IMG/VR virus record: IMGVR_UViG_3300017917_003143
Coordinates: 279,633 to 343,632 of that record
DNA length: 64,000 nucleotides
Strand: one strand, 5' to 3'
Shown here: in pieces, positions 6,331-50,863 of the stretch
Position numbering within the stretch: position 1 is the first letter of the stretch
Layout: each line of letters starts with the position of its first letter
Notes under the pieces: generated by a model
Databases searched by the model: none
Seen by the model: only the letters and a program-made list of their open reading frames with translations
Told to the model about the DNA's origin: nothing
Position numbers and translations under genes: made by a program

Positions 6331-7419
6331 ATGCTAGATGCCATCAAACCGTTACTAGATAGCGACCTAATCAACGAGGAAACTCGTACAGCGATCTCAG
6401 AACAATGGGAACAAAAGCTGAACGAAGCTCGTGAGGTGGTACGTGCAGAACTCAGAGAAGAGTTTGCACAACGCTATGAGCATGACAAACAAGTGATGGT
6501 GGAAGCCCTAGATCGCATGGTAACAGAAGGTCTCGCCGCAGAGATCCAAGCTGTGCAAGCTGAAAAGCAAGCATTGGCCGAAGATCGCGTCAAGTTCAAT
6601 GTCAAGATGAAGGAATCAGCTACAAAGTTTAACGACTTTATGGTTTCTAAACTTGCAGAAGAAATTGGTGAACTGCGTAAAGATCGCAAAATTCACACAG
6701 AATCAATCCAGAAATTGGAAAGTTTTGTCGTGAAAGCTCTTGCTCAAGAAATCCGTGAATTCGCACAAGACAAGAAGGATGCGGTGGAAACCAAAGTCCG
6801 TTTAGTCCGTGAAGCTCGCAAACAGCTTGAGACATTGAAAGCACGTTTCGTAAAAGAAAGTGCTGACAAGATGAGCAAATCTGTAGCCAAGCATCTCAAG
6901 GCTGAACTTAGTCAACTCCACGAAGACATCAAAGTTGCTCGCGAGAACAATTTTGGTCGTCGTATCTTTGAAGCATACGCCGCTGAATTCGGTGCTACTC
7001 ACCTCAGTGAGAACGCAGAAATCCGTAAGCTCAACAGCGTTATTGCTGCCAAAGATCAGAAGTTGGCTGAAGCCATCAAGATCACCGAGAAGGCTAAAAC
7101 CCTCGTTGAATCAAAAGAACGCGAGATTCGCATAATCCGTGAATCCAATGAGCGAGCAAAGCTCATGGACGAACTGCTTGGACCTCTTAACGAGGAAAAG
7201 GCCGGTGTTATGAAGAATCTGCTAGAAAACGTTCAAACATCCCGTTTAAAGAACGCTTTCGAAAAATATTTGCCAGCTGTGCTCGCAGATAACAAACCAG
7301 CAAAAGCTAAGTCAGTGATTGCTGAGAGTGTTACTGAAGTCACTGGTGATAAATCTGCAAAGGTTGTAGCGGAAGATCGCAGTAATGTGATCGACCTTAA
7401 ACGCCTGGCAGGGCTTTAA
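6331..7419 (+). CDS. gp22: Prohead scaffold protein (T4 gp22-like)
   Basis: 362 aa coiled-coil, E/K-rich, between protease and capsid genes. Confidence 0.85.
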   Translation: MLDAIKPLLDSDLINEETRTAISEQWEQKLNEAREVVRAELREEFAQRYEHDKQVMVEALDRMVTEGLAAEIQAVQAEKQALAEDRVKFNVKMKESATKFNDFMVSKLAEEIGELRKDRKIHTESIQKLESFVVKALAQEIREFAQDKKDAVETKVRLVREARKQLETLKARFVKESADKMSKSVAKHLKAELSQLHEDIKVARENNFGRRIFEAYAAEFGATHLSENAEIRKLNSVIAAKDQKLAEAIKITEKAKTLVESKEREIRIIRESNERAKLMDELLGPLNEEKAGVMKNLLENVQTSRLKNAFEKYLPAVLADNKPAKAKSVIAESVTEVTGDKSAKVVAEDRSNVIDLKRLAGL

Positions 7420-7444
7420 TCTTAGGAAGGAAGAAGGAGACATT

Positions 7445-8647
7445 ATGTCACAAGAACTACTAGAAAGCCGTTGGGATGAGACCAAAGAAGCCCTACTCGA
7501 AGGCCTACAAGGTGCTCGTCGCTCAACCATGGGTGTTGTTTTAGAAAACACTCGCAAATACTTGAAAGAGAATGCTTCTGCAGGCTCAACAGTTTCAGGT
7601 AATATTGCAACATTAAACCGTGTGATCCTACCAGTGATTCGACGTGTTATGCCAACCGTTATCGCTAACGAGTTGGTTGGCGTTCAGCCAATGACAGGTC
7701 CAGTTGGACAGATCCACACATTACGTGTTCGTTATGCTCAGAGCTTGACAGACAACTCAGCCGCACAAACATCAGTTACAGCTGGTGAAGAAGCGTTGAG
7801 CCCATTCAAGATCGCTCAGGCATATTCGCGTCAAGTATCCGGTGTTGCTGGTGATACAGCTACCGAGTACACAGGTGCTAACACAGCAACTCTTGAAGGC
7901 AATGGTGGTCGTCAGATCTCTGTTCAAATCTTGAAGCAAGCTGTTGAAGCTAAGACACGTAAGCTACAAGCTCGTTGGACATTCGAAGCCGCGCAAGATG
8001 CACAAGCTATGCACGGTATCGATATCGAAGCTGAAATCATGGCAGCTCTTGCACAAGAAATTACTGCTGAAATTGACCAGGAGATTCTCCTGTCACTCCG
8101 CACTCTTGCAAGCACAGAGTTTACATACAACCAAGCTACCGTTTCAGGTACAGCTACATTCGTTGGTGACGAACACGCCGCATTGGCAGTTTTGATCAAC
8201 CGTGTTGCTAACTTGATCGCTCAGCGCACACGTCGTGGCGCTGGTAACTGGGCTGTTGTATCCCCAGCTTCATTGACTGTTCTACAGTCTGCAACAACTT
8301 CTGCTTTTGCACGTACAACAGAAGGCACATTCGAAGCACCTACAAACACCAAGTTTGTTGGTACATTGAACGGTGCTATGCGTGTGTTCTGCGACTCTTA
8401 TGCCGCAGACTCAACACCAGTTCTCGTTGGTTACAAAGGCGCAAGCGAAACTGATGCAGCCGCATTCTACTGCCCATACATCCCATTGATGTCAAGCGGT
8501 GTTGTGCTGGATCCAAGCACATTCGAGCCAGTCGTATCGTTCATGACACGTTACGGCTACATCGAACTCACAAACACAGCATCTTCATTCGGTAACGCCG
8601 GTGACTATGTTGGTGAGATTGCTGTTTCTAACTTGTCATTCTCTTAA
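7445..8647 (+). CDS. gp23: Major capsid protein (T4 gp23-like)
   Basis: LVGVQPMTGPVGQIHTLR, KTRKLQARWTFEAAQD, EITAEIDQEI, FYCPYIPL, FMTRYG motifs; strong SD and downstream terminator. Confidence 0.97.
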   Translation: MSQELLESRWDETKEALLEGLQGARRSTMGVVLENTRKYLKENASAGSTVSGNIATLNRVILPVIRRVMPTVIANELVGVQPMTGPVGQIHTLRVRYAQSLTDNSAAQTSVTAGEEALSPFKIAQAYSRQVSGVAGDTATEYTGANTATLEGNGGRQISVQILKQAVEAKTRKLQARWTFEAAQDAQAMHGIDIEAEIMAALAQEITAEIDQEILLSLRTLASTEFTYNQATVSGTATFVGDEHAALAVLINRVANLIAQRTRRGAGNWAVVSPASLTVLQSATTSAFARTTEGTFEAPTNTKFVGTLNGAMRVFCDSYAADSTPVLVGYKGASETDAAAFYCPYIPLMSSGVVLDPSTFEPVVSFMTRYGYIELTNTASSFGNAGDYVGEIAVSNLSFS

Positions 8648-8671
8648 TCCGACACTGGATCAAGAAAACTC

Positions 8672-8699
8672 AAAAACCCGCTTCGGCGGGTTTTTGTTT
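8672..8699 (+). terminator. Rho-independent terminator after capsid gene
   Basis: AAAAACCCGC-TTCG-GCGGGTTTTT hairpin with cUUCGg loop and U tract. Confidence 0.92.
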
Positions 8700-8716
8700 G
8701 GCCGCTAAATATTATC

Positions 8717-8857
8717 ATGATTGCACGTATTAACTTTGGATTAGGAATGCCGGCGGCTCGTCCACAAGCACCCATAGGCAATCCTATCGGGCATACAGTT
8801 CCACAAACACTGCCTCGCCCAGCAGTACATAACTTGATAGTAAAAACAAATGGCTAA
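8717..8857 (+). CDS. 46-aa small ORF (missed by track)
   Basis: MIARINFGLGMPAARPQAPIGNPIGHTVPQTLPRPAVHNLIVKTNG; TAAATA 5 nt upstream; stop overlaps next ATG. Confidence 0.5.
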   Translation: MIARINFGLGMPAARPQAPIGNPIGHTVPQTLPRPAVHNLIVKTNG

Positions 8858-9215
8858 TCCACCTCCACCATATGCAGACATCACTGGCATCAGCCGTACA
8901 GTGATGAAAGACAACGCACAAGAATCATTGGCCAACTACGATGGCAATGCCAGACCCGCAGAGTTCACAGTTGATCAAACCACAAGTAATGTTTACATTG
9001 GTAATGCCACAGGTAATTTGACACAAGTTTGGTCACCCACCGTGGCGATATTTCCTGTGTACACAACTTCTGCGGCTGCTAATCTTGTAGGATCTATAGG
9101 ACAAGCGATCTGTATCAGCGACAGTGCCCAAGGCAGTGACCCCGACGGAATGCTGGCATTTTGGGACACAACACACAATCGCTGGAGTTACGTACACAAC
9201 AATCAAGCAGTATAA
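8850..9215 (+). CDS. Hypothetical virion protein
   Basis: 121 aa; C-terminal module resembles the C-terminus of fibre 21568-25248. Confidence 0.65.
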   Translation: MANPPPPYADITGISRTVMKDNAQESLANYDGNARPAEFTVDQTTSNVYIGNATGNLTQVWSPTVAIFPVYTTSAAANLVGSIGQAICISDSAQGSDPDGMLAFWDTTHNRWSYVHNNQAV

Positions 9216-9223
9216 GTATTGCC

Positions 9224-10288
9224 ATGCAAGACTTGCATTGGCGATATAATTTCAATACAACAAAATTTGACTTTATTGAAAACAATCCACACCAGCATTA
9301 TGAACCACTGCTGAAGCACGTCTACGTGCCCACCTTGGTCATTGATATCAATTTGGTATCTGCCCAGTCATTGGACAAGTACATCAAAAAAGTTTTAGAT
9401 CTTGCTATAGAGCATCGTATTTCTTACCAGCAGATAATATTTGATGGCACACAAGATCCGGTCAATGATTACGCTACCAAAGTCAAAGTTCTTGATCTGT
9501 TTGCCCAGACAGCAGGAATAAAATGCTATTTCGCATTGAGCCAGTTTGATCTACAGACACACCCTTGTCTGGTAGAAATAAACTATCCAAGCTGGTTGTT
9601 TGTGTTCAAAAAACAATCACTGCCTGATTGGAACACAGCCCAGCGCACACACAAATTCAGCTGTCTCAATCGCAATCCTACATTCCATAGATTGATTTTT
9701 TACACCATGATCAAGCAACAAGGTCTGCTGGATGATTTTGTGTATAGTTTCTACAATCGCTGTCCCTATCAAGGACACTTGATAAATCCTATGAAGTATC
9801 GTGGGATTGAAAATTTGGTTGACAGCGACCTTGCACGACAATGCATAGAAAGTTTACAAGACTTTCCGATCAGCTGGGACAACGAAGTGTTAGGTGTCAA
9901 CGATCATTCCATCATGCACCCAGCCTACTCAGATACCTGGTGTAACATAGTGACCGAGACTTCGGCAATCACCAGCTTTACCAGCGAAAAAATTTGGAAA
10001 CCCATGGCCGCTGGACAACTGTTTTTTGTAGTAGGCGCACCCGGAACCTGTGCCTGGTTGAAAAAATTAGGATTCCATACCTTTGATGATGACTACGATT
10101 TCAAAATCAATCTCTCCAGCAGATTAAACATGGTAGTAGAGCGCATCAAAGAACACAGAGATGATGTTCCTGGATGGTGGAATCAGAACAAGTTCCATAT
10201 TGAACACAATTTCCATTGGTTGCGCAGTGGTAATGTAGAGAAAACCCTGCTTGACCCCATAGTAAATCAACTTAACCATAAATACTAG
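9224..10288 (+). CDS. Putative glycosyltransferase-like protein (GT10/GT-B-like C-terminal motif)
   Basis: Likely start ATG 9224 (TAAGTA 5 nt upstream). FSCLNR, NIVTET...FTSEKIWKP...LKKLGFHTF motif; paralog at 56157. Confidence 0.5.
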   Translation: MQDLHWRYNFNTTKFDFIENNPHQHYEPLLKHVYVPTLVIDINLVSAQSLDKYIKKVLDLAIEHRISYQQIIFDGTQDPVNDYATKVKVLDLFAQTAGIKCYFALSQFDLQTHPCLVEINYPSWLFVFKKQSLPDWNTAQRTHKFSCLNRNPTFHRLIFYTMIKQQGLLDDFVYSFYNRCPYQGHLINPMKYRGIENLVDSDLARQCIESLQDFPISWDNEVLGVNDHSIMHPAYSDTWCNIVTETSAITSFTSEKIWKPMAAGQLFFVVGAPGTCAWLKKLGFHTFDDDYDFKINLSSRLNMVVERIKEHRDDVPGWWNQNKFHIEHNFHWLRSGNVEKTLLDPIVNQLNHKY

Positions 10289-10368
10289 TCAACGTAATAA
10301 TGCGTTTTATGCGGATACCACCGCGTAGTGGCTAGAACCCACATCGGACTTCTATAAGGAGAAAACAA

Positions 10369-11217
10369 ATGGGACGTTCTCTCAAAATCCAAAAATACGG
10401 TGCCGCTCAAGGTATCACATATCCAAACAACACTTCTGCTAACACACCAGCAGCCGCTGTGCCAGTTGATCAAGGTTATCCTCAGTTCAGTCAGTTGACT
10501 GATCCTGTGTATTATTCTTCGCTGACAGCATCTAACTTCTATGGTGTCGTTGGTGGTAATAGAACAACTGCAACAACTACAACATTCCCTGTTGTTAAAT
10601 GCGCGGTCAACATTGCTCTTCCAGATGGTTCAGGCCAAGGGGTTGAAGACGGCGTTATTTTACGCCAAAAAGGTGCTCACAAATATCTTGTCATGAGCAG
10701 TGGTCAAGACGTACAAGACGAAGACATGGTTGTTGGAGCTTCTTACTACATCAAAACTTTGGATACAACTAACTGGCAACAAATGGGTGCTCCAGTGGGC
10801 GCACAAGTTGGCACAATCTTTACCTGCACAGCACTGTGCGCCAATCCACAAAACGGTGTTGGTTATTTGGTAGGCCAATGTGTTCTAACCAGTGACTTGA
10901 CTCCAGGACCTGGCTTGATGGCTATCAGCTATGCAGTTGGTGGTGACTCAACCGAAGTCGCTGTTTCCAAGTTGACCAACAAGTTCTTACAAAACTGGGA
11001 TAACTTCCAGAATGCTGCCGGTACTTCATTAGACAGCTATGCTGGCACAGGTAACAACGTAGGTGAAGTCAATTACTCAGGTGAGACCACTTATCTGGCC
11101 AACTTCTTCACTGACGATGCAGGCGCACAAGCAACCAAGTCTGGTGCTGATGCCGCAACATTCAGCAACGGTACAGGCGATATTGAATTGGCACAAGTCG
11201 AGAAGTTTACTTCTTAA
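10369..11217 (+). CDS. Probable abundant virion structural protein
   Basis: 282 aa, T/G/N-rich; strong AAGGAG SD, own late motif at 10279, terminator downstream. Confidence 0.65.
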   Translation: MGRSLKIQKYGAAQGITYPNNTSANTPAAAVPVDQGYPQFSQLTDPVYYSSLTASNFYGVVGGNRTTATTTTFPVVKCAVNIALPDGSGQGVEDGVILRQKGAHKYLVMSSGQDVQDEDMVVGASYYIKTLDTTNWQQMGAPVGAQVGTIFTCTALCANPQNGVGYLVGQCVLTSDLTPGPGLMAISYAVGGDSTEVAVSKLTNKFLQNWDNFQNAAGTSLDSYAGTGNNVGEVNYSGETTYLANFFTDDAGAQATKSGADAATFSNGTGDIELAQVEKFTS

Positions 11218-11231
11218 TTTGAGTTAGTTCC

Positions 11232-11266
11232 AAAATCCTCACAGCTATATACTGTGAGGATTTTTT
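11232..11266 (+). terminator. Terminator hairpin
   Basis: AAAATCCTCACAG-CTATATA-CTGTGAGGATTTT, 13-bp stem plus T tract. Confidence 0.85.
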
Positions 11267-12477: not shown

Positions 12478-12487
12478 GGAAAATAAA

Positions 12488-12802
12488 ATGACGATTCAAG
12501 TAGGAAACGTAACCACATCAGCCGCATCAGTCTACACCAGCGTTGGTAACACAGCTATCACTTTTTTGAGTTTGTGTAACTATACTGCAGGCAACGTGGC
12601 AGCCAATGTTTATGTAGTGCCCAATGGTGATACTGCAGGCAATGACAATGTGATCATCAACAATATTACCATAACTGTAGGCGATACATATCAGCTCTAT
12701 GCTGGTGCAGAAAAACTTTTGTTGGAAAACGGTGACTCAGTTCAAGTTGACGCCAATGCTAACAATGCAATCACTACAGTCACAAGTTACACTTCAATCT
12801 AA
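12488..12802 (+). CDS. Hypothetical virion protein (beta-rich, 104 aa)
   Basis: SD AAGGA; T/N/V-rich; translationally coupled to next gene. Confidence 0.7.
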   Translation: MTIQVGNVTTSAASVYTSVGNTAITFLSLCNYTAGNVAANVYVVPNGDTAGNDNVIINNITITVGDTYQLYAGAEKLLLENGDSVQVDANANNAITTVTSYTSI

Positions 12803-13224: not shown

Positions 13225-13251
13225 ACCCATAAATACTAAAAAGGGTGATCA

Positions 13252-40783: not shown

Positions 40784-40811
40784 TAGGCTAAATATGATAT
40801 AGGGGATTGAT

Positions 40812-41414: not shown

Positions 41415-41425
41415 GGAAAAAACAA

Positions 41426-43066
41426 ATGAATAACATGTATGACATACTCGGTAAAATGAATTTGCTGGAAGGCAAAGGTAGCAAACCTGACTTCCTTGAT
41501 CTGGACAAAGATGGCAACAAAAAAGAACCAATGAAGTCAGCGGCCAAGGAAGTTGATGAAGCATCATATTCTGCCAAAGCCGCTCGTGCTGGCAAAGACA
41601 TTGGCAAGCCAGGCAAAGCATTTGCACAGATAGCTGCCAAAGCTGGCAAGGCCTATGGTAGCAAAGAGCGTGGCGAGAAAGTTGCTGGTGCTGTGTTGGC
41701 CAAACTCCGTGCCAAAGAAGATGTGGCACAAGAAGGCAACAAGTTCACAGGCAATCTAGCCAAGGCTCGTGCCGCAGGCAAAAAAGTAGCAGACCTTGAT
41801 GGTGACGGAGACATGGAGCCAGTGCGCGAAGGTAATCTTGAAGAACTTGACATGAAGTTGCTCAAAGGACTACAAGGTGCAATGAGCAAGAATCAAAAGG
41901 ATCCAGAGAGCGAGCGCAACATCCACAAGAAATATGGATACCGCAGTGATCGTGACGAGACATCAGACGACGACTATGATGAGCACGGCAATCTCAAAGA
42001 CAAGAAAAAAGCCAAGCACAAAGATGATGGTCCTAAGAAAAAAGGACGCCCCAAAGGTTCAGGCCGTAAACTTGGAGCCAAAGGTCCTACAGGCAAGAGC
42101 AAATTGCTCCGTATGAAAGAAGACGAAACACAGTTGGTAGACAAAGGCGAATACGATCGCGAAGGCGACATGGCCAAAGAGCAGTTGCACACTATCGAAG
42201 CCGCTGCCAAAGAATTACACAGTATCCTTGGCGATGATCAGAACTTGCCAGAATGGGTGCAATCAAAGATTACCAAGGCCATGGACTACATTGACACAGC
42301 ACGTGACTATATGTTGAGCCAAAGGCACGATCAAGAAGAAATGCCTGTGGCTGAAAAGGCTGTGAGCAAAGCACAACAACGTTTCATGGGCATGGCACAT
42401 GCCATGCAAAAGGGCGAAAAGATTCCTGGCGCCAGCAAGGAATTAAAGCAAGTAGCCAAGACCATGAAGAAGGGTGACGTAGAAGATTTTGCTAAAACCA
42501 AACACTCAGGTCTTCCTGAAAAGAAAAAGAAGGAAGAAGAAGTCGAAGAAACCACAGTGGCTGGTAGCGTAGCACCTGCACCTGCTGGCGGAAAAGGAAA
42601 AAAAGGTATGGTATTTGGCAAGGGAGTATATGAAAACAAGATCGCTGAGAGCTTTGACAAGAAATTAGGCGAAGTGCTCAACGAAGGCATGAGCATCAAT
42701 ATGAGCATGGGCGAAGACGGACAGAAAAGCCTTACAGTCAACGCCACAGATGACGATGCTGTAAAACTTGCGCAGATTCTCAAATTGGCTGGCATGGGTT
42801 CAAGCCATGGTTACCAAGACGCATGCCCTGCATGTGGACAGCAAGATTGTGGTTGTGAACAGATGGACGAAGCACAAGATGATTTGGCCAATTCTCCTGA
42901 TGAAGAAACAGAAACAACAGAATACATGACCAAAACGATCGCCGGCGGCTTGAACAAGAACAAGGTAACAGGAATGACTACAATACCTGTGGTGCCTACC
43001 CAGCAAGTCACTGAAGCTGAGATTGAAAAAGATCTCATGAATCTTTACAAACAGTTTAAAGCATAA
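41426..43066 (+). CDS. K/E-rich putative internal head (poly)protein
   Basis: 546 aa low-complexity modules separated by hydrophobic-X-E sites. Confidence 0.5.
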   Translation: MNNMYDILGKMNLLEGKGSKPDFLDLDKDGNKKEPMKSAAKEVDEASYSAKAARAGKDIGKPGKAFAQIAAKAGKAYGSKERGEKVAGAVLAKLRAKEDVAQEGNKFTGNLAKARAAGKKVADLDGDGDMEPVREGNLEELDMKLLKGLQGAMSKNQKDPESERNIHKKYGYRSDRDETSDDDYDEHGNLKDKKKAKHKDDGPKKKGRPKGSGRKLGAKGPTGKSKLLRMKEDETQLVDKGEYDREGDMAKEQLHTIEAAAKELHSILGDDQNLPEWVQSKITKAMDYIDTARDYMLSQRHDQEEMPVAEKAVSKAQQRFMGMAHAMQKGEKIPGASKELKQVAKTMKKGDVEDFAKTKHSGLPEKKKKEEEVEETTVAGSVAPAPAGGKGKKGMVFGKGVYENKIAESFDKKLGEVLNEGMSINMSMGEDGQKSLTVNATDDDAVKLAQILKLAGMGSSHGYQDACPACGQQDCGCEQMDEAQDDLANSPDEETETTEYMTKTIAGGLNKNKVTGMTTIPVVPTQQVTEAEIEKDLMNLYKQFKA

Positions 43067-43740
43067 TGAAAACACTGCGCGAATACATCACTGAATCAGA
43101 ACAATGGATGGATAACCCAGCCGTTGGTGATGACTTTGCGATCAACATCAAAGAAGATTGTTTGATTGAAAGCCATATCATCGCAGTAGAAGAAGATAGA
43201 CTCTGCATCGAAGCTGATGAAAAATTGATGGCCATATTAGAAAGTTATGGATATCAATTAGAAGACAAGTGTTCTGTCTGCGGGCACGAAGCCTGCACCT
43301 GCGAAGATCTTGATGAAATGATGAGCGTGGACGATGTGTTGGTCAGTGAAGATCCCACAGAAGAAGAGCCAATGACTCCTGGTCGTGATGATCCAGATGG
43401 TACTACAGCCGATGATCCAATCGGCGAAGATTCTGGCGAAGAAGATGGCATGCCATTGGATATCGACGAAGCTGAATATCAAGGTCGCAAAGTGCCCTTG
43501 GGTAAGCCCATGCGTGGTGATGTCAAGAAGTTCAAAGTTTATGTGCGTGATCCCAGCACTGGCAATGTAAAAAAAGTCAACTTTGGCCACGGTGGTACAT
43601 CGGCTAAACGTCTTGGTCAGAAGACCATGAAGATCAAAAAATCAAATCCTGCACGTCGTAGATCATTCCGTGCTCGCCACAACTGCGACAATCCAGGACC
43701 AAGAACCAAAGCAAGATATTGGTCTTGCCGTGCGTGGTAA
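43066..43740 (+). CDS. Putative internal head protein with basic C-terminal domain
   Basis: Starts MKTLREYITE; acidic middle; basic KKFKVYV...VKKVNFG...RARHNCD...KARYWSC end. Confidence 0.55.
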   Translation: MKTLREYITESEQWMDNPAVGDDFAINIKEDCLIESHIIAVEEDRLCIEADEKLMAILESYGYQLEDKCSVCGHEACTCEDLDEMMSVDDVLVSEDPTEEEPMTPGRDDPDGTTADDPIGEDSGEEDGMPLDIDEAEYQGRKVPLGKPMRGDVKKFKVYVRDPSTGNVKKVNFGHGGTSAKRLGQKTMKIKKSNPARRRSFRARHNCDNPGPRTKARYWSCRAW

Positions 43741-43755
43741 ACAAGGAAAATAAAA

Positions 43756-44034: not shown

Positions 44035-44035
44035 A

Positions 44036-44449
44036 ATGAGAGCACGAGAGTTTGTCACAGAAGACGCTGGATTCAACGGGTTTGATCACGACGAGTCTAC
44101 CGGTCGTCGACGTCCTACTAAAAAACACCAAAAAGGTCATCCTGACAATTGGTACGTAGCTACCAGTCCGGGTGCCATGCGTATTGACAACCTTGACAAG
44201 TATTATGATCTATATCGTATGAGTATGATCATGGCTGGCGGCCCCACAGATGACGTAGCTGATGAAGAATCTTACATAGCCAACAGTCCTGTGTTGAGTG
44301 GGTATACTGATGAGGATGATGAAAAAATTAAGTACGCTGCCAAACGCATGGGCGGAGTGATCAGAGATATTGCACCACCTGGCAGCCGCGAACCTCAAGA
44401 TACACAGAAACAGAGTCCAATCAAAGCATTCAAAGGTTACCCAAAATGA
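44036..44449 (+). CDS. Putative internal head protein, paralog 1
   Basis: MRAREFVTE...SPIKAFKGYPK. Confidence 0.6.
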   Translation: MRAREFVTEDAGFNGFDHDESTGRRRPTKKHQKGHPDNWYVATSPGAMRIDNLDKYYDLYRMSMIMAGGPTDDVADEESYIANSPVLSGYTDEDDEKIKYAAKRMGGVIRDIAPPGSREPQDTQKQSPIKAFKGYPK

Positions 44450-44832
44450 GAGCACGTGAGTTTATCACCGAACAAGAAAATCTTGCACCTGAGCAAGCCG
44501 CTCCCATGCGACAAACTTATGTGATTCCTGGACTCAGCGCCGCGGATCCTTACAAAAATTATAGATTTGGTGTGGCCATAGCACGAGCCAGATCTGATCA
44601 AACACCCGATGACATCAACCCACACCGACCCGAGTGGTCAAAAGAAACACCATTTGGTGAGCATGGTGTGGTAGTGGGCATGAATGCAGGAATCAAACCT
44701 GTGATTGATGCCGCACTGAAGATGACAGGTACCCCAGGTGGCAAACGAATAGTATCAACTCCAGCCAGCGACGAGCCAGAGTTCGTGGAAAAAATCAGTC
44801 CAATCAAACCCTTTAAAGGATATCCACGGTAA
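44446..44832 (+). CDS. Putative internal head protein, paralog 2
   Basis: MRAREFITE...SPIKPFKGYPR. Confidence 0.6.
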   Translation: MRAREFITEQENLAPEQAAPMRQTYVIPGLSAADPYKNYRFGVAIARARSDQTPDDINPHRPEWSKETPFGEHGVVVGMNAGIKPVIDAALKMTGTPGGKRIVSTPASDEPEFVEKISPIKPFKGYPR

Positions 44833-46439
44833 TGGCCACGCCAAATCCCTCAGAAGTAGCACCATGGTATCTGCGTAACATAACGCAGGCCCTGGAACTG
44901 GACGAAGCCACAGGCAATGTATTTGTCCGTACCAATGCGGCCATACTTGGCAATGTATCAGTGGGTAATGTATCTATTGGCGCATTAGGCAACATTGACC
45001 TAACAGGTAACACCATGCCGGTGTCTGTTATAGGCGATGTCACAGTTCTACAAGGCACCAATCCTTGGGTAGTCACTGGCAACACAAATGTAGCTATCAC
45101 ATCGGGCAATGTAGGCATCACAGGCAATGTCAACGTCACACAAGGTACAACACCTTGGACAGTGTCCGGCAATGTGGGGATCTCAGGCACAGCCAATGTT
45201 GTGTTGGCCGAAGATGCCAATGTAGTCATCTCAGGATTCAGCGGTGCTGTGTCAGATGCGTTTGGCCGACTGCGTGTGAGCGAACCTTACACCCTGTTTG
45301 ACACACAGGCTCGTTATTTTGATCATCAACAGTTTGCCAGCAACGTCACAGGCACTGGCAACGTTGTTTACGTACAAAATCAAAGCTCGTATCAACTCAA
45401 TGTGGGTTCAGCATCAGGCGACAGCGTACTAAGAGAAACCTTAAAAGCATTTCCTTATCAACCAGGCAAGAGTCAACTTACATTAAACACATTCTGTTTT
45501 AACACACCCAAGACCAATCTGCGCCAGCGTGTGGGATTGTTTGATGCTGACAACGGTGTGTTCTTTGAAAACGATGGAGAATACAACTACTTTGTGATCA
45601 GATCAGGCTCCACAGGAGTAGAAGAGCGTGTGCGTCAAGACGCCTGGAACGGCAATCAACTGCTTGGAGTAGTCAACACCAATAATCCCTCAGGTATAAA
45701 TCTATATCCTGATCGTACCCAGATCATGTTTGCTGACGTAGAGTGGTTGGGTGTGGGTTCGGTGCGTGTAGGATTTGTGATCAACGGTGCTTATGTCATC
45801 TGTCACACATTTAATCATGCTAACCAACCAGGCAATACAAAAGTCTACATGACCACGGCTACCTTGCCCATACGCTATGAGATAACCAACACTGGTGCTA
45901 CTACTGGTGCCAGCATGATGACACAGATATGTAGCTCGGTGATTTCTGAAGGGGGATTCCAGTTAGCAGGATCAGGTAATCCTCGTGCGGCCTCGCATGT
46001 TATAGGTACTCCGGTTCGATTGCCCAACGATCAGAGTTTTAAACCAGTGCTGTCAATCAGATTAAAGAGCACCAACTTAGATGCCGTGGTCATTCCTATC
46101 AACTATTCTTTGGTTCCTGTTGCACAGAGTTTATTCCAATACCGAATCTATAAAAAAGCTGTCACATCAGGCGGCTCATGGGTCAGTTCAGCCGCAGACA
46201 GTTCAGTGGAATACAATCTTGCACCTACCGCATTGGTATCTGGAGATATAGCGGAACAAACTTTTCTAAACTCCAGTAACCAAAGTAGTCAAGCACCTAC
46301 ACAGACATCATTTACATTCGTATATCAATTGGAGCGAGAGCCATTTACAGGCGTAGCATATGAATATGTGATCATGGCTGCCACCACAGGTACTAATCAA
46401 GACGTTTACGCCAGCATTGAATGGCAGGAGATTACATAA
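44832..46439 (+). CDS. Probable virion structural protein
   Basis: 535 aa; GNV repeats at N-terminus, DAFGRLRVSEPYTLFD motif, beta-sandwich-like composition. Confidence 0.6.
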   Translation: MATPNPSEVAPWYLRNITQALELDEATGNVFVRTNAAILGNVSVGNVSIGALGNIDLTGNTMPVSVIGDVTVLQGTNPWVVTGNTNVAITSGNVGITGNVNVTQGTTPWTVSGNVGISGTANVVLAEDANVVISGFSGAVSDAFGRLRVSEPYTLFDTQARYFDHQQFASNVTGTGNVVYVQNQSSYQLNVGSASGDSVLRETLKAFPYQPGKSQLTLNTFCFNTPKTNLRQRVGLFDADNGVFFENDGEYNYFVIRSGSTGVEERVRQDAWNGNQLLGVVNTNNPSGINLYPDRTQIMFADVEWLGVGSVRVGFVINGAYVICHTFNHANQPGNTKVYMTTATLPIRYEITNTGATTGASMMTQICSSVISEGGFQLAGSGNPRAASHVIGTPVRLPNDQSFKPVLSIRLKSTNLDAVVIPINYSLVPVAQSLFQYRIYKKAVTSGGSWVSSAADSSVEYNLAPTALVSGDIAEQTFLNSSNQSSQAPTQTSFTFVYQLEREPFTGVAYEYVIMAATTGTNQDVYASIEWQEIT

Positions 46440-47143
46440 TGAAAAAACTATTAGCCATTCTACTATTTGTACCCGTGGCAGTATGGGCACAAATCAATCA
46501 ACAATGTCCACAGTTTACCAGTCACGGCACACCTGCTTATCAAGCACAGCCAGGTGATCAAGAACTGTGTAAAACAAACTATGCTGTCATCCATCGTTGT
46601 TCAGTCAAAGCACCTGTGGCAGTGTTTGAACATTTGACAGTGGCCGCAATGACAGGTCCTGCCAAACGTAAAGACAACTTCCGACCAGATCCTGCTGTAC
46701 ATCCAGAATGTCAAGCTACCTTGGCCGACTATGCCACAGTGGGCCGCACACACGATCGCGGACACATGGCTCCGGCGGCTAACAACACACAAAATGATCA
46801 GATCATGAGCGAAAGCTTCTTCTTATCAAACATGGTAGCACAAGTGGCCAACAACAATCGTGGTATCTGGAAACAGTTGGAAACTTGGGAACGTGACTGG
46901 GCCATGAAAGGCGGAGACTTCTACATCATCTCCGGTGGTATCTTTGATCAAGGTCATCCAGTGACAGGCAATGGATTGGGCATACCCACACGCCTTTACA
47001 AAGTCATACACGAAAAAGCATCAGGACAGACCATGGCATATCTCATGCCCAATGCTCCACTACCTGTTGCAGATTTACCTAAGTATCAAGTTCCACTGGA
47101 AGCAGTAGAACAAGCCACAGGCTTCCGTTTTCCTTTTAGATGA
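46439..47143 (+). CDS. Non-specific DNA/RNA endonuclease (NucA/Serratia family) with signal peptide
   Basis: Start ATG 46439 (TAATG coupling); MKKLLAILLFVPVAVWA signal; DRGHMAP, ESFFLSNM.AQ...NRGIWKQLE. Confidence 0.9.
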   Translation: MKKLLAILLFVPVAVWAQINQQCPQFTSHGTPAYQAQPGDQELCKTNYAVIHRCSVKAPVAVFEHLTVAAMTGPAKRKDNFRPDPAVHPECQATLADYATVGRTHDRGHMAPAANNTQNDQIMSESFFLSNMVAQVANNNRGIWKQLETWERDWAMKGGDFYIISGGIFDQGHPVTGNGLGIPTRLYKVIHEKASGQTMAYLMPNAPLPVADLPKYQVPLEAVEQATGFRFPFR

Positions 47144-47343
47144 CCGCAGAAGAACTACAGAGACTCGCTGGTATAGGAGTTTATCGACCATATAACCTGC
47201 CTCCAACGGCAGGTTCTAACATCAGCATCACTGGCAATGAAAAAGGCGAGCTGATGAAAAAACACAACATCCAGCCAGGCACACCTGAGTGGTTCCAGTT
47301 ATGGTTCAGTAAGCCTTACTTGACTGGTGAGCATCCTCTTTGA
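47140..47343 (+). CDS. Small hypothetical protein (67 aa)
   Basis: ATGA-coupled; ELQRLAGI motif. Confidence 0.65.
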   Translation: MTAEELQRLAGIGVYRPYNLPPTAGSNISITGNEKGELMKKHNIQPGTPEWFQLWFSKPYLTGEHPL

Positions 47344-47851
47344 GACCCAAGTAAAGATTCCAGCTGGGGTGCCGTACACCGCGATAGGTGCTTTTCACAG
47401 AGTTGACCAAGGCCCAGTAGTTAGGCTTTACAGGAGCTTTGTTTGGCCTCCAGATCTTGTTGCCTTTTTCTGAGTTACACTCTTTACAGGCAGTGACACA
47501 GTTTTCCCACGTAGTGGTTCCGCCTTGTGCTCGAGGTAGCACATGATCGATGGTGAGTTCACGGCCGTTGAATGTTTCGTCGCAGTATTGGCAAGTGAAT
47601 AGATCTCGTAGATAAAGATTCTGCCTGCTGAATCGCATGCCGCCATTTTTGCCAAAACCTCGCTTGGTCACGGCCACAGCAGGGACTCGCATCTCCAGCT
47701 TGGCGCTTCGTACGACCCAATCATCATACCATTCTAACACTTGGATTTTGTCCAAGAAGAATAGTTTAACCGCTGTTTGCCAATCAATTGTGCTGAGTGG
47801 CAAGTAATTGACCGGTTGGTAGTCCGGTGCTAATATAAGGGTATCACTCAT
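47306..47851 (-). CDS. HNH endonuclease (McrA-like)
   Basis: RDLFTCQYC...LTIDHVLPRAQGG...WENCVTACKECNSEKG. Confidence 0.92.
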   Translation of the reverse strand: MSDTLILAPDYQPVNYLPLSTIDWQTAVKLFFLDKIQVLEWYDDWVVRSAKLEMRVPAVAVTKRGFGKNGGMRFSRQNLYLRDLFTCQYCDETFNGRELTIDHVLPRAQGGTTTWENCVTACKECNSEKGNKIWRPNKAPVKPNYWALVNSVKSTYRGVRHPSWNLYLGLKEDAHQSSKAY

Positions 47852-47889
47852 AAGAATATTTATATGCTAACATTTTGGTAAGTAATACT

Positions 47890-49455
47890 ATGTCAAAGAG
47901 TTTAGAAGGTGTATTAGTCAAGGCTCCTCATCGGCGCCAACCCTACACTGAACAACAAATCGAAGAATTCGTGAAATGTGCAGACCCTATCACAGGTCCT
48001 CATTATTTCATGTCAAACTTCTTTTTCATCCAACATCCTTTGCATGGCAAGATGTTGTACCAGCCCTATGAATTCCAAGACAGGCTGATAGAAACATATC
48101 ACAATTATAGATTCTCTATCAGCATGATGCCACGACAAACGGGCAAATCGACCTCGGCTGCTGGCTATCTTTTATGGTACGCTATGTTTGTACCAGACTC
48201 GACAATTTTGGTCGCGGCGCACAAGTATTTAGGCGCACAAGAAATTATGCAACGTGTACGATATGCTTATGAAGCCTGTCCAGATCATATCCGTGCTGGT
48301 GTGACATCGTACAATAAAGGATCTATAGAATTTGATAACGGTAGTCGTATTGTAGCACAAACTACTACTGAAAATACCGGTCGTGGTATGTCTATCACAC
48401 TCCTGTACTGTGACGAGTTTGCATTTGTAAGACCTACCATAGCCAAAGAGTTTTGGACTTCTATCACTCCTACATTGTCAACTGGTGGTAAGGCGATCAT
48501 TACATCAACACCAAACTCAGACGAAGATCAGTTTGCCTTGATCTGGAAGCTGGCCAACAAGCTGGAGGATGACTATGGCAACCCAACAGAGATAGGCCAA
48601 AACGGATTCCGTGCGTTCCGTGCGTTTTGGAGAGAGCACCCAGATCGTGACGAAAATTGGGCAAAACAACAAAGAGCAATACTGGGTGAAGAACGATTCC
48701 GTCGAGAGATGGACTGCGAATTCATCATCGATGATGAAACATTGATAGCACCTACCAAACTAGTTGATCTGACATCAAGAGACCCATTGTATAAAACAGG
48801 ACAGGTGCGCTGGTTCCAGAACCCACAACCTGATCGATTCTATGTAGTAGCGTTAGACCCCAGTCTGGGCACCGGCGGCGACCCTGCTGCCATACAAGTG
48901 TTTGATGCCAACACCACCGAGCAAATAGCCGAATGGAGGCACAACAGGACCACGATACCTGAACAGGTACGTATCCTGGCAGATATCTGCAAACACATCA
49001 ACGAAAAGATCAAAGATTCAAAGAGTATCTACTACAGCATAGAAAACAACACCATTGGCGAAGCCGCACTGATATCTATAGCAGAGTACGGCGAAGAAAA
49101 CATACAGGGCTATTTCCTCAGCGAATCAGGTGGCACCAGCGGGCGTAGATATCGTAAAGGATTTAACACTACTAACAAGCCCAAGCTGGCAGCTTGTGCC
49201 AAGATGAAAAATCTGATAGAAACAGGGCGCATGAAAATACACTCAGCCAGCTTAGTCACTGAGCTTAAAAACTTTATCGCATCGGGCGCTGGATATGCCG
49301 CAAAAGCTGGAGAAACTGATGATTTAGTGATGGCTACTATACTTGCAGTGCGCATGATGCAACTGTTGCAGAGCTATCACACTGAACTGGACACGCAATT
49401 ACGAGATCACAGCGACACGGTCATAGAACCCATGCCATTCATAGCAGCCTTCTAA
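47890..49455 (+). CDS. gp17: Terminase large subunit (T4 gp17-like)
   Basis: PRQTGKS Walker A, LLYCDEFAF Walker B, ITSTPN, ALDPSLG, DDLVMA nuclease motifs; likely start ATG 47890. Confidence 0.96.
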   Translation: MSKSLEGVLVKAPHRRQPYTEQQIEEFVKCADPITGPHYFMSNFFFIQHPLHGKMLYQPYEFQDRLIETYHNYRFSISMMPRQTGKSTSAAGYLLWYAMFVPDSTILVAAHKYLGAQEIMQRVRYAYEACPDHIRAGVTSYNKGSIEFDNGSRIVAQTTTENTGRGMSITLLYCDEFAFVRPTIAKEFWTSITPTLSTGGKAIITSTPNSDEDQFALIWKLANKLEDDYGNPTEIGQNGFRAFRAFWREHPDRDENWAKQQRAILGEERFRREMDCEFIIDDETLIAPTKLVDLTSRDPLYKTGQVRWFQNPQPDRFYVVALDPSLGTGGDPAAIQVFDANTTEQIAEWRHNRTTIPEQVRILADICKHINEKIKDSKSIYYSIENNTIGEAALISIAEYGEENIQGYFLSESGGTSGRRYRKGFNTTNKPKLAACAKMKNLIETGRMKIHSASLVTELKNFIASGAGYAAKAGETDDLVMATILAVRMMQLLQSYHTELDTQLRDHSDTVIEPMPFIAAF

Positions 49456-49468
49456 TAAATACATTACT

Positions 49469-50863
49469 ATGAGTCAATCAAACACTGCTTCCCAACAATT
49501 ATATGATCTATTAGTTTCGCGCGATTTTGAGCCCGAAGCACTGGACGCCGCTGGCAAACCCGCTGCCGACCCGGGCGAAGCAGATATCATCAGTTTTGAT
49601 TACAAGACACAGGAAAAAGATTACGGTACTGTGGTGCTGGTAATTGACGAAGAAAACAATCTTGATGTGTACTACGGCGACAACATGGGTCGCGCCATGG
49701 AAGGCGAAGACAAGGGAGACTGGTATGATTTCCTTTATCTCTTGCGTATGTTTGCCAAGCGCAATTTATTGACATTCAGCCTTAAAAATCTATCTCGACT
49801 CAAGTACAGCATGAGAACCATGGCCGCTGTCAAAGAGAGCTTGTTTGAAGGATACTACGGTAACCGCCGAGTCAGCTACAGCGATCAGCCCAACAAAGCA
49901 CGTTTGGTAATCAAACATAATCGCAATCTGGGTGAAGGTGATGCACGTTTCCGTCATATCGAAAGTTTGTTTGTAGAAAACGACAAGGGCGAACGATTCC
50001 GTGTACCATCGAAAAGTTTAATCGAAGGACGCATACTTGCTCGCCATGTAGCCGAAGGTGGCAATCCATACGATGCATTTGGTCAACACATATCTGAAAT
50101 GGTCAAAGATTTAAAAACATTGGCCAACTTCGTCAGAGTAGCCCGCCACAAAGATTACACAGGCGAAGCAAGCCACATGGTAGAAAGCGCCATCAAGCAT
50201 TACACAGAACTCAAAGCCAAAGCCAAGCGCATGATCAGTCGTCGTGGGTATCACGAAGCATTGGACAGTTTTGATCCGTCAGTAATCACACCAGTTGACG
50301 AAGCAGTTGAAACCATTAGAGAACTATTTGTACAGCAAACACTAGATCCTCGTGTAGAGCAGGCTTTGCCTGTGCTGGCCAGATTGCAAGAACAAGAAAC
50401 CATCATGAAAGAAGTAAATGATTTTGAGTCCTGGACCAATCAGATGATGGAAGGAACCTGGGCACTGGCAGATACACCTGAACTAGTAAAAAAACTACAG
50501 GATCTGATGAGCAAGGAACTCATAGTGGGTCCTGATGCTACCAATGCCACAGAACAATTATATGATCTCGTGGGAGACGATCAACTGTTTGACATACTTG
50601 ACGATATAGCTCAAGTCAATCCAGACGCCAATGCCTGGGATGATCCAAGAGTACAACAGAGACTGGCTCAATTAGGAGTGGCCATGCCCAGTGTAAATGC
50701 CCAAGCCGACTCTGATAAAGATCTTGATACCACTGATCTCAAAGAAGGATCGTGCAACATGACTCGTGAAGGTGTAGAATGTCCTGTACACGGAATGAAC
50801 GAATGTGGTATGTACGAATCTCGTGATTTAGAAAGAATCAAGACTCTCGCTGTAGTAAAATGA
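49469..50863 (+). CDS. Hypothetical late protein (464 aa)
   Basis: TAAATA 7 nt upstream; ends CPVHG...ERIKTLAVVK. Confidence 0.7.
   Translation: MSQSNTASQQLYDLLVSRDFEPEALDAAGKPAADPGEADIISFDYKTQEKDYGTVVLVIDEENNLDVYYGDNMGRAMEGEDKGDWYDFLYLLRMFAKRNLLTFSLKNLSRLKYSMRTMAAVKESLFEGYYGNRRVSYSDQPNKARLVIKHNRNLGEGDARFRHIESLFVENDKGERFRVPSKSLIEGRILARHVAEGGNPYDAFGQHISEMVKDLKTLANFVRVARHKDYTGEASHMVESAIKHYTELKAKAKRMISRRGYHEALDSFDPSVITPVDEAVETIRELFVQQTLDPRVEQALPVLARLQEQETIMKEVNDFESWTNQMMEGTWALADTPELVKKLQDLMSKELIVGPDATNATEQLYDLVGDDQLFDILDDIAQVNPDANAWDDPRVQQRLAQLGVAMPSVNAQADSDKDLDTTDLKEGSCNMTREGVECPVHGMNECGMYESRDLERIKTLAVVK

What the first reader, a model, noticed from the sequence alone, without database searches (positions are those of the whole stretch)
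7393..50860. Scaffold C-terminal motif LxRLAG recurs in unrelated late proteins
Seen: the scaffold ends DLKRLAGL (7393-7416); similar segments are QILKLAGM (42773-42796), ELQRLAGI (47152-47175) and, more weakly, ERIKTLAV (50831-50854). Knowledge: scaffold C-termini commonly bind the inner capsid surface (for example P22). Inference: this may be a second short capsid-docking signal that cargo proteins borrow from the scaffold.
Basis: partly seen in the sequence, partly recalled or inferred. Interest (0 to 1): 0.6.

Follow-up and report, generated by a model that had tools for sequence, protein, structure and literature searches.

The report
Shared scaffold-tail peptide on virion proteins
A short peptide (roughly E-L-K-R-L-A-G-I) that ends the head-scaffolding protein of this 344-kb jumbo phage also sits, conserved, on several unrelated proteins here and in distant relatives, where the carriers checked are virion proteins, so it is probably an address tag for the assembling head, although binding has not been shown.

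Summary
Three are real, conserved instances of one short linear motif (hydrophobic-x-[KR]-[KR]-L-A-G-[ILMV]).

- **Scaffold:** the motif ends the scaffold in the window, in 120 close metagenomic homologues and in PA5oct, Atu_ph07 and Phosso. Rak2/CBB/121Q-type phages carry degenerate forms.
- **67-aa protein:** the motif is nearly invariant at the N-terminus across the sampled relatives (477 relatives in IMG/VR).
- **546-aa protein:** the motif is conserved in the full-length homologues, and distant ones hold 2-3 copies.
- **Statistics:** a profile built only from the 67-aa family in other genomes ranks the scaffold C-terminus and the 546-aa site second and third in this proteome (0.07 expected). 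It finds strong extra copies in PA5oct (E 5e-5, 2.6e-4), Atu_ph07 (1.8e-4, on a Nudix enzyme) and Vibrio phage 2.275.O. T4-type control phages give none or one.
- **Carriers:** the PA5oct carriers were detected in virions by mass spectrometry, and the CBB carrier is annotated as a structural protein.
- **Fourth site (ERIKTLAV):** it lacks the glycine and scores at noise level, but the Phosso orthologue ends in a canonical copy.

Docking to the capsid protein is inferred only. The complex prediction gave weak support (0.45, best control 0.00). Verdict: real motif, probably a prohead-addressing peptide, a new variant of a known kind.

The parts
6331..7419 (+). Head scaffolding protein (362 aa): two long helices and a disordered C-terminal tail.
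   Evidence: It lies between the protease and the capsid protein. It matches phrog_10922, and its homologues are annotated as scaffolding protein. AF2 gives helices 16-205 and 224-318, with the tail 320-362 below pLDDT 50.
7384..7416 (+). Scaffold C-terminal motif NVIDLKRLAGL (residues 352-362, followed by the stop codon).
   Evidence: It is almost invariant in 120 homologues of 78-100% identity, although residues 319-350 vary. It is conserved as ELRRLAGIK, ELRRLAGIEK and DLKRLAGIKK in PA5oct, Phosso and Atu_ph07, and is degenerate in 2.275.O, CBB, Yen9-04 and 121Q-like phages. Score 14.7 bits, E 0.041.
47140..47343 (+). Conserved 67-aa protein with the motif at its N-terminus. Its last 38 bases overlap the convergent HNH gene.
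   Evidence: IMG/VR holds 477 relatives. 24 columns are invariant across 25 sequences. There is no Pfam, PHROG or Atlas annotation. AF2 gives a helix at 3-9 and then a disordered linker at 15-29, with mean pLDDT 59.
47143..47175 (+). Motif copy TAEELQRLAGI (residues 2-12).
   Evidence: The orthologues read M..[SE]EL[KR][KR]LAGI[TN]EF almost without exception.
41426..43066 (+). 546-aa mosaic, acidic, low-complexity protein with a DUF3008 module (312-367), one motif copy and a Cys-rich knuckle just after it.
   Evidence: Family hits are, and the modules are shared with cyanophage proteins. Its make-up resembles the phrog_15988 virion structural proteins of CBB and 2.275.O: acidic, with LAG copies, and in the 2.275.O protein a Cys knuckle too.
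42764..42796 (+). Motif copy KLAQILKLAGM (residues 447-457).
   Evidence: It is conserved as A..LA.[IL]LK[LM]AG[LMV] in the full-length IMG/VR homologues. Divergent homologues carry 2-3 copies, such as ...RRMMEMAGL and ...RRMREMAGI. Score 13.5 bits.
49469..50863 (+). 464-aa virion structural protein (phrog_13484), just downstream of the large terminase gene.
   Evidence: The PA5oct orthologue EST35_0206 is a structural protein found by ESI-MS/MS.
50825..50857 (+). Weak, glycine-less motif-like C-terminal helix DLERIKTLAVV (residues 453-463).
   Evidence: It scores 6.7-8.0 bits, which is noise level. Close orthologues keep ELERIRSLAAVQ*. The Phosso orthologue ends ...ARLRKLAGI*, a canonical copy. 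The Atu_ph07, PA5oct, 2.275.O and CBB orthologues do not.
7445..8647 (+). Major capsid protein (Gp23 family), the proposed receptor of the motif.
   Evidence: Pfam Gp23, E 4e-99. The complex prediction with scaffold residues 318-362 gave weak support: 0.45 against a best control of 0.00.
5698..6321 (+). Prohead protease (Peptidase_S77, T4 gp21 type).
43066..43740 (+). 224-aa protein with a T4-CTS-like N-terminus (MKTLREYITE). It also has a segment paralogous to the motif-plus-knuckle region of the 546-aa protein in which the motif has decayed (KLMAILESYGY).
   Evidence: Sequence. BLASTP aligns 546-aa residues 421-498 with residues 21-104 of this protein at E 3e-4.
44036..44832 (+). Two small genes (137 and 128 aa) with T4-CTS-like N-termini, MRAREFVTE and MRAREFITE. 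They are the neighbouring 'first' address signal.
   Evidence: In relatives the 67-aa gene lies inside arrays of such genes.

Best explanation
The segment is a short linear motif: an amphipathic helix of about ten residues closed by Ala-Gly-hydrophobic. The consensus is [DE]-[LI]-[KR]-[KR]-L-A-G-[ILMV], with hydrophobic residues 2, 5 and 8 positions before the glycine.

It forms the extreme C-terminus of the head scaffolding protein of a clade of jumbo phages with a T4-type head module. The clade includes this genome and its many metagenomic relatives, PA5oct, Atu_ph07 and Phosso, with degenerate forms in Rak2/CBB/121Q-type phages.

The proposed mechanism has three steps.
- **Scaffold docking:** the flexible scaffold tail docks through this helix onto the inner face of the capsid-protein lattice during prohead assembly.
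- **Cargo docking:** unrelated proteins carry the same peptide at a terminus or in a disordered linker, sometimes in 2-3 copies, and use the same site to be built into the prohead.
- **After assembly:** the prohead protease degrades the scaffold while the cargo stays in the head.

What is shown:
- The motif, its conservation, its enrichment and its preference for termini.
- The virion status of the PA5oct carriers (mass spectrometry) and the structural-protein annotation of the CBB carrier.

What is inferred:
- That the peptide binds at all.
- That the receptor is the capsid protein.
- That the carriers in this genome are packaged.
For: 1. **Scaffold conservation.** The scaffold C-terminus is conserved over large distances, at 31-40% overall identity. 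It is almost invariant in 120 close homologues although the preceding 30 residues vary.
2. **Orthologue conservation.** The motif is conserved in orthologues of the 67-aa protein and of the 546-aa protein. Distant homologues of the latter hold 2-3 copies.
3. **Independent profile.** A profile from the 67-aa family in other genomes picks the scaffold C-terminus and the 546-aa site as hits 2 and 3 of this proteome. The expected number of hits at 13.5 bits or more is 0.07.
4. **Replication in other genomes.**
   - PA5oct: 4 hits at 15 bits or more against 0.045 expected. They are EST35_0235 (27.4), EST35_0203 (24.9, and 18.7 at its N-terminus) and the scaffold (20.0).
   - Atu_ph07: the scaffold (33.6) and a Nudix hydrolase that starts MNIDKLKKLAGIKK (26.3, E 1.8e-4; the Nudix domain begins after residue 13).
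   - Vibrio phage 2.275.O: a 111-aa protein that ends ...ISRLAGVTNEDG* (16.0).
   - Phosso: a 976-aa virion-protein orthologue that ends ...RLRKLAGI* (15.0).
5. **Termini.** Four of the six non-scaffold hits at 15 bits or more lie at a terminus.
6. **Carriers are virion proteins.**
   - EST35_0203, EST35_0235 and EST35_0206 are marked ESI-MS/MS in the PA5oct record. The base rate there is 93 of 461 proteins (PMC7318152).
   - CBB_213 is annotated 'structural protein' and belongs to phrog_15988.
   - A further carrier in this genome, at genome positions 116133-116669, has two tandem motif-like copies at its C-terminus. It matches phrog_13138, a virion structural protein.
7. **Scaffold removal.** The PA5oct scaffold itself lacks the MS mark, as expected for a protein removed at maturation.
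8. **Natural controls.** T4-type phages whose gp22 lacks the motif give 0, 0 and 1 hits at 12 bits or more.
9. **Gene context.** In relatives the 67-aa gene lies in arrays of genes with T4-CTS-like N-termini.
10. **Disorder.** The motif sits on a disordered tail or linker in the AF2 models.
11. **Complex prediction.** Capsid protein plus scaffold residues 318-362 scored 0.45, with 0.00 as the best of 3 controls: weak support.
12. **Precedents.** These are the T4 capsid targeting sequence (PMC3012670) and the RIIK motif shared by the 80alpha scaffold and SaPI1 CpmB, which binds the capsid protein (PMC5644958).
Against: - There is no direct evidence of binding.
- The complex score is in the band the tool itself calls more often wrong than right without a good prior. 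One of the three runs gave 0.01, and the partner pLDDT was 45-50.
- No proteomics exists for this genome. The 67-aa, 546-aa and Nudix carriers are not known to be packaged.
- Ala-Gly-hydrophobic after an amphipathic helix is also a generic helix C-cap. A natural false positive of 16 bits occurs in S-PM2.
- Two of the PA5oct copies and the 546-aa copy are internal, not terminal.
- The PA5oct carriers lie in regions where most genes are structural, so their virion status is weaker evidence than the genome-wide base rate suggests.
- T4-type phages with homologous capsid protein and protease do without the motif.
- CBB shows no enrichment with the strict profile.
Confidence: 0.5

Rival explanations
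1. The motif is an address peptide, but its receptor is not the capsid protein. It joins the scaffolding core itself, by pairing with other copies of the motif or with the scaffold's long helices, as is assumed for the T4 capsid targeting sequence. Alternatively it binds the portal.
For: T4 internal proteins are said to be targeted into the scaffolding core (PMC3012670). The complex prediction with the capsid protein is only weak. Multi-copy carriers would fit a multivalent core network as well as a lattice. The 67-aa gene sits among CTS-type genes in relatives.
Against: A motif at the very end of the scaffold would have to bind the scaffold itself. In solved cases (P22, and 80alpha in PMC5644958) the scaffold C-terminus contacts the capsid protein. 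The unrelated-protein controls scored 0.00. No test with the scaffold body or the portal was possible, because only one complex job is allowed.
Confidence: 0.2
2. The motif is a recognition or exosite signal for the gp21-type prohead protease. It marks substrates (the scaffold and some head proteins) for processing rather than for incorporation.
For: All carriers coexist with a Peptidase_S77 protease. In most 67-aa orthologues the motif is followed at once by I-[TN]-E, which fits the T4 protease rule (L/I-x-E; the rule is from my own knowledge). The PA5oct copies are followed by V-x-E within 4-9 residues.
Against: The capsid protein, the main substrate, has no copy. The window's own 67-aa protein lacks the I-x-E site. 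[LIV]-x-E is frequent by chance. The protease itself was not tested as a partner.
Confidence: 0.1
3. There is no shared function. The similarity is a generic helix-capping pattern (amphipathic helix plus Ala-Gly-hydrophobic) that arose independently. The statistics are inflated by choosing the pattern after seeing it.
For: The literal pattern in this genome alone is only about ten times over expectation. A profile built from 7 distant scaffolds gives a top hit of 16.4 bits, against a shuffle mean of 12.1 and maximum of 19.0. S-PM2 gives a 16-bit false positive. The fourth site is noise.
Against: The profile was built from sequences independent of the hits. The result replicates in four other genomes with E down to 5e-5. 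The motif is the best-conserved part of otherwise fast-evolving regions. It prefers termini, tracks the presence of the motif on the scaffold, and its tested carriers are virion proteins.
Confidence: 0.08

Closest known systems
T4 capsid targeting sequence (CTS) of internal proteins IPI-III and Alt
   Same: Both are short peptides on otherwise unrelated, fast-evolving proteins in a phage with a gp21/gp22/gp23-type head module. The CTS directs proteins into the prohead (PMC3012670). This genome also has CTS-like N-termini next door.
   Different: The sequence is different. The CTS is N-terminal only and is cut off by gp21. The present motif occurs at N-termini, at C-termini and internally, sometimes in several copies, and it is shared with the major scaffold protein's C-terminus. 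Cleavage and targeting are untested.
RIIK C-terminal motif shared by the phage 80alpha scaffolding protein and SaPI1 CpmB
   Same: A motif near the scaffold C-terminus contacts the capsid protein's inner surface, and a second, otherwise unrelated protein carries the same motif and uses the same site (PMC5644958).
   Different: In that case the second protein belongs to a satellite and competes to change capsid size. Here the carriers are the phage's own virion proteins and enzymes, there are many of them, and binding is not demonstrated.
C-terminal coat-binding domain of the P22 scaffolding protein
   Same: Both are a basic C-terminal helical element on a flexible tail of an elongated helical scaffold that is needed to bind coat protein (established knowledge).
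   Different: P22 uses a helix-turn-helix of about 30 residues and is not known to share it with cargo proteins. The scaffold families are unrelated.
Encapsulin cargo-loading peptides
   Same: Both are short conserved terminal peptides, rich in small and hydrophobic residues, on unrelated cargo enzymes, and they dock on the inner face of an HK97-fold shell (established knowledge). The Nudix enzyme of Atu_ph07 with an N-terminal copy fits this picture.
   Different: Encapsulins have no scaffold or protease, and the peptide sequence is different. This is an analogy only.
C-terminus of T4 gp68-type prohead core proteins
   Same: T4-type, KVP40-type, Vi01-type and D504 core proteins end in a basic stretch followed by [LM]-G-[LI]...RRKALGLS*...KRQQMGL*...FRKMMGLSKNK*. 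The last of these resembles the CBB scaffold end ...SRNAGISKNR*.
   Different: The register of the hydrophobic residues differs (A-L-G against L-A-G). No homology was shown, and I know of no described function for that tail. This is a lead, not a test.

Membership tests
Scaffold C-terminal capsid-binding motif (P22 / 80alpha type) | It lies at the extreme C-terminus of the scaffolding protein, on a flexible tail. | tested here: met
   Residues 352-362 of 362 carry the motif. The tail 320-362 is disordered in AF2. The same position holds in 7 distant phages.
Scaffold C-terminal capsid-binding motif (P22 / 80alpha type) | It is conserved more strongly than the neighbouring sequence. | tested here: met
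   The last 12 residues are almost invariant in 120 homologues, while residues 319-350 vary.
Scaffold C-terminal capsid-binding motif (P22 / 80alpha type) | It binds the inner surface of the major capsid protein. | tested here: inconclusive
   The complex prediction scored 0.45 against a best control of 0.00. The verdict was 'weak support', and no interface was given.
Scaffold C-terminal capsid-binding motif (P22 / 80alpha type) | It is required for prohead assembly. | not testable with these tools
   This needs genetics in a cultured relative.
Capsid targeting signal (T4 CTS type) | A short peptide shared by otherwise unrelated proteins of one phage. | tested here: met
   There is no BLASTP similarity among the carriers outside the motif. 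The motif is enriched in 4 genomes.
Capsid targeting signal (T4 CTS type) | The carriers are found inside virions. | tested here: inconclusive
   The PA5oct carriers EST35_0203 and EST35_0235 carry the ESI-MS/MS mark, and CBB_213 is annotated 'structural protein'. Location in head or tail is not known, and there are no data for this genome.
Capsid targeting signal (T4 CTS type) | N-terminal position, with removal by the prohead protease at L/I-x-E. | tested here: not met
   Only some copies are N-terminal. Others are C-terminal or internal. The window's 67-aa protein lacks a cleavage site after the motif. It is therefore not a member of the T4 CTS family in sequence or layout.
Capsid targeting signal (T4 CTS type) | The peptide is sufficient to package a foreign protein. 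| not testable with these tools
   This needs a reporter fusion experiment.

The most novel reading that the evidence does not exclude
A modular 'LAG-box' address peptide is shared by the scaffold and a changing set of a dozen or more unrelated virion proteins and enzymes (including a Nudix hydrolase) across the PA5oct / Atu_ph07 / Rak2-like jumbo phages and their very abundant freshwater relatives. Cargo and scaffold compete for one site on the gp23-type lattice, so that cargo load is set by motif copy number. This would be a second, scaffold-mimicking packaging code beside the T4-type CTS. It could be used to load foreign proteins into jumbo-phage heads.
Probability: 0.3. Interest if true: 0.75.

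Novelty: new variant of a known kind. Interest (0 to 1): 0.6.

Why it matters
How jumbo phages sort dozens of proteins into their heads is largely unknown outside T4 and the phiKZ group. A ten-residue peptide shared by the scaffold and the cargo would help in three ways:
- It gives a simple, testable rule for a large and environmentally abundant clade.
- It gives a way to predict head cargo, including enzymes possibly delivered into the host, from sequence alone.
- It gives a handle for loading foreign proteins into these capsids.

I found no paper that mentions the motif.

Tried and rejected
- **Literal pattern count in this genome.** [LIVM].[RK]LAG[LIVM] gives 2 hits plus the 67-aa ORF. This is too weak and was chosen after the fact, so I replaced it with profiles built from independent sequences.
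- **Profile from 7 distant scaffold C-termini.** The top hit is the 67-aa N-terminus at 16.4 bits, but shuffles reach 19. It is suggestive only, because the input is heterogeneous.
- **The fourth site as a true instance.** It cannot be accepted on its score. It is kept as 'possible' only because of the Phosso orthologue.
- **Homologues of the 67-aa protein.**
  - tblastn against cultured phages found none.
  - A search of five clade genomes found none at E up to 10.
  - A search of four T4-type genomes found none.
  - So the motif hits elsewhere are not hidden homologues of it.
- **Orthologues of the two small Atu_ph07 carriers in Phosso.** None were found, so their conservation could not be tested.
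- **Recent DNA transfer between the sites.** Rejected, because synonymous positions differ.
- **My recollection that T4-like cyanophages are rich in this motif.** Not borne out for S-PM2.
- **T4-type gp22 C-termini.** They have no such motif.
- **Protein Atlas search on the 67-aa protein.** It returned only unnamed viral clusters.
- **Literature searches for the peptide strings.** They returned only irrelevant papers.
- **Complex prediction.** It gave weak support, not a pass to lean on.
- **Internal low-scoring hits.** Those in the MoxR-type ATPase of PA5oct and in the 148-aa CBB protein that I read as LigT-like were judged chance.
- **One paper search.** It failed on a term that was too short.


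Full report
**What the window is.** The window is the last 64 kb of a single 343,632-bp contig. This is a jumbo phage whose head module is of the T4 type. The genes are:
- portal, 2716-4497
- a small core protein, 4509-4727
- an acidic core protein, 4841-5680
- a Peptidase_S77 (gp21-type) protease, 5698-6321
- a 362-aa all-helical protein, 6331-7419
- a Gp23-family major capsid protein, 7445-8647

Further downstream lie:
- tail tube, head closure and virion structural genes
- a non-specific endonuclease
- the T4-type large terminase, 47875-49455
- a conserved virion structural protein, 49469-50863

The nearest cultured relatives are PA5oct, Phosso, Atu_ph07, Vibrio phage 2.275.O and the Rak2/CBB/121Q group, at 31-40% identity in the scaffold. 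Metagenomes hold thousands of closer relatives.

**The observation.** ORF 6331-7419 is the scaffold by three criteria:
- its position between the protease and the capsid protein
- its predicted structure (helices 16-205 and 224-318, then a disordered tail 320-362)
- the annotation of its homologues

In PA5oct this protein is one of the few in its neighbourhood without a virion mass-spectrometry mark, as expected for a scaffold that is removed.

**Conservation.**
- *Scaffold tail.* The tail ...[DE][LI]KRLAGL is almost invariant in 120 homologues of 78-100% identity, whereas the 30 residues before it vary. Distant phages keep it at the same place. PA5oct has EELRRLAGIK*, Phosso ELRRLAGIEK* and Atu_ph07 DLKRLAGIKK*. 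More degenerate forms are LDRLTKIAGIRK* (2.275.O), ISRNAGISKNR* (CBB), ISRYAGIKKKR* (Yen9-04) and LDVLSGINKK* (121Q-like).
- *67-aa ORF.* It is a real gene family with 477 IMG/VR relatives. 24 columns are invariant, and the N-terminus reads M..[SE]EL[KR][KR]LAGI[TN]EF nearly without exception.
- *546-aa protein.* It is a mosaic, acidic protein. Its motif A..LA.[IL]LK[LM]AG[LMV] is kept in the full-length homologues, and divergent homologues carry two or three copies.
- *464-aa protein.* It keeps a C-terminal amphipathic helix (ELERIRSLAAVQ* in 72%-identical orthologues) but has no glycine.

**Statistics.** To avoid circularity I built an 11-column matrix from 15 distinct N-termini of the 67-aa family found in other genomes. 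I then scanned whole proteomes made by a simple greedy ORF caller.

| Genome | Hit | Score (bits) | Expectation |
|---|---|---|---|
| This genome | own 67-aa family member | 19.6 | trivial hit |
| This genome | scaffold C-terminus | 14.7 | E 0.041 |
| This genome | 546-aa site | 13.5 | 0.07 hits at 13.5 or more |
| PA5oct | EST35_0235 | 27.4 | E 5e-5 |
| PA5oct | EST35_0203, internal copy | 24.9 | E 2.6e-4 |
| PA5oct | scaffold | 20.0 | E 3e-3 |
| PA5oct | EST35_0203, N-terminal copy | 18.7 | E 6.5e-3 |
| Atu_ph07 | scaffold | 33.6 | not computed |
| Atu_ph07 | Nudix hydrolase starting MNIDKLKKLAGIKK | 26.3 | E 1.8e-4 |
| Atu_ph07 | 113-aa protein starting MDIERLKILAGLE | 10.8 | not significant alone |
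| 2.275.O | 111-aa protein ending ...ISRLAGVTNEDG* | 16.0 | E 0.029 |
| Phosso | scaffold | 26.0 | not computed |
| Phosso | 976-aa protein ending ...RLRKLAGI* | 15.0 | not computed for Phosso |

In this genome 200 shuffles gave 0.175 hits at 12 bits or more.

As natural controls I scanned three T4-type phages whose gp22 lacks the motif. They gave 0, 0 and 1 hits at 12 bits or more, the one being an HNH-like KRLYGIT. CBB shows no enrichment with this strict matrix.

Four of the six non-scaffold hits at 15 bits or more are at a protein terminus. The carriers share no other similarity. The DNA of the window's sites agrees only where the residues force it. Selection therefore acts on the peptide.

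**Who the carriers are.**
- *PA5oct.* EST35_0203 and EST35_0235 are 'structural protein, ESI-MS/MS', as is EST35_0206, the orthologue of the window's 464-aa protein. The phage has 93 virion proteins out of 461 (PMC7318152).
- *CBB and 2.275.O.* CBB_213 and its 2.275.O orthologue (phrog_15988, virion structural protein) carry two and three relaxed copies, and the 2.275.O protein has a Cys-rich knuckle as well. In make-up they resemble the window's 546-aa protein.
- *This genome, outside the window.* A 178-aa protein at genome positions 116133-116669 (phrog_13138, virion structural protein) ends in two tandem motif-like copies.
- *Relatives.* The 67-aa gene lies in arrays of small genes whose N-termini look like the T4 capsid targeting sequence. 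The window's 546-aa gene is followed by three such genes.

**The fourth site.** By score it is noise. However, the Phosso orthologue of the same virion protein ends in a canonical copy at the same place. The other orthologues do not. I treat it as a possible decayed instance, not as evidence.

**Mechanism.** The motif sits on disordered tails or linkers. It is basic and amphipathic and ends in Ala-Gly-hydrophobic. This looks like a peptide that folds on binding.

The simplest reading is that the scaffold tail and the carriers use one receptor in the prohead. By analogy with P22 and 80alpha the receptor would be the inner face of the capsid protein.

The details are:
- it scored 0.45, with 0.00 as the best of three controls
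- the three runs gave 0.01, 0.45 and 0.46
- the partner pLDDT was 45-50
- the runs agreed in at least 61% of contacts
- the mark was reached by 51 of 78 solved complexes and 2 of 108 mismatched pairs, but scores of 0.60 or under are called weak

I therefore keep the scaffold core, the portal and the protease as alternative receptors.

**Comparison with what is known.** Functionally the closest cases are the T4 capsid targeting sequence (PMC3012670) and the RIIK motif shared by the 80alpha scaffold and SaPI1 CpmB, which binds the capsid protein (PMC5644958). The motif is not a member of the T4 CTS family, because its sequence, positions and copy number differ and no cleavage rule holds. The nearest sequence resemblance I saw is to the C-termini of gp68-type core proteins, which is only a lead. 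No paper found mentions the motif.

**Verdict.** The motif is real, conserved and clade-wide. I rate it a new variant of a known kind, with interest 0.6.

Noticed in passing
window 43066-43095, 44036-44062, 44446-44472; also L011, L020, L058, L072, L087: Three adjacent genes start MKTLREYITE, MRAREFVTE and MRAREFITE, close to the T4 capsid targeting sequence. In relatives, ten or more consecutive small genes start M[RK].x[ED][LF][IVFL]. Two of them I read as a nucleotidyltransferase-like and a HAD-like enzyme, from their sequence motifs only.
   Followed up: partly
L020 3382-3564, L058 4101-4361, L072 3811-4071, L087 3897-4082, L011 4770-4961; compare window 7445-7600: Small proteins in relatives begin MKI[KR][ED][IL].E[ST]A[ST]AGATSAG.... 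This copies the presumed maturation cleavage site and new N-terminus of the major capsid protein (YLKE / NASAGSTVSGNIATLN). The own genome has that string only in the capsid protein.
   Followed up: partly
window 42797-42870 (546-aa), 50750-50820 (464-aa), 43280-43320 (224-aa); PA5oct EST35_0203 residues 21-36; 2.275.O 411-aa protein: Cys-rich knuckles lie next to the motif in several carriers across three genomes. Examples are C..C....C.C and ...ECPVHG. phrog_32143 matches the one in the 464-aa protein. They may form a small metal-binding module coupled to the helix.
   Followed up: no
window 47306-47851 (- strand): An HNH endonuclease gene lies between the 67-aa gene and the large terminase gene and overlaps the 67-aa ORF's 3' end by 38 bases. 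Of the 80 fetched loci, only the three where the 67-aa gene neighbours the terminase gene show this endonuclease; in the other 77 the gene lies in a different context. That suggests a recent homing-type insertion.
   Followed up: partly
window 46421-47143: A DNA/RNA non-specific endonuclease (Endonuclease_NS) lies directly upstream of the 67-aa gene. Its N-terminal hydrophobic stretch looks like a signal peptide.
   Followed up: no
window 7270-7330 and scaffold orthologues L001-L007: A second conserved element, [LV]-[TA]-E-x(0-2)-[VI]-[TK]-T/G-G-[DN]-[RK], lies about 30 residues before the scaffold C-terminus in all clade members. It may be a protease site that would free the motif-bearing tail. 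The 67-aa family has a similar ISITGNEK after its motif.
   Followed up: no
L246, L247, L249, L250 (gp68-type genes of T4-type phages): gp68-type prohead core proteins end in a basic run plus [LM]-G-[LI], for example RRKALGLS* and FRKMMGLSKNK*. This is reminiscent of the jumbo-phage scaffold tail and especially of the CBB form ...NAGISKNR*.
   Followed up: no
window 42359-42526 (546-aa residues 312-367) and 42077-42325: The 546-aa protein shares a DUF3008 module and a second module (residues 218-299) with many T4-like cyanophage proteins at 52-62% identity. This is module exchange between very different phage groups.
   Followed up: no
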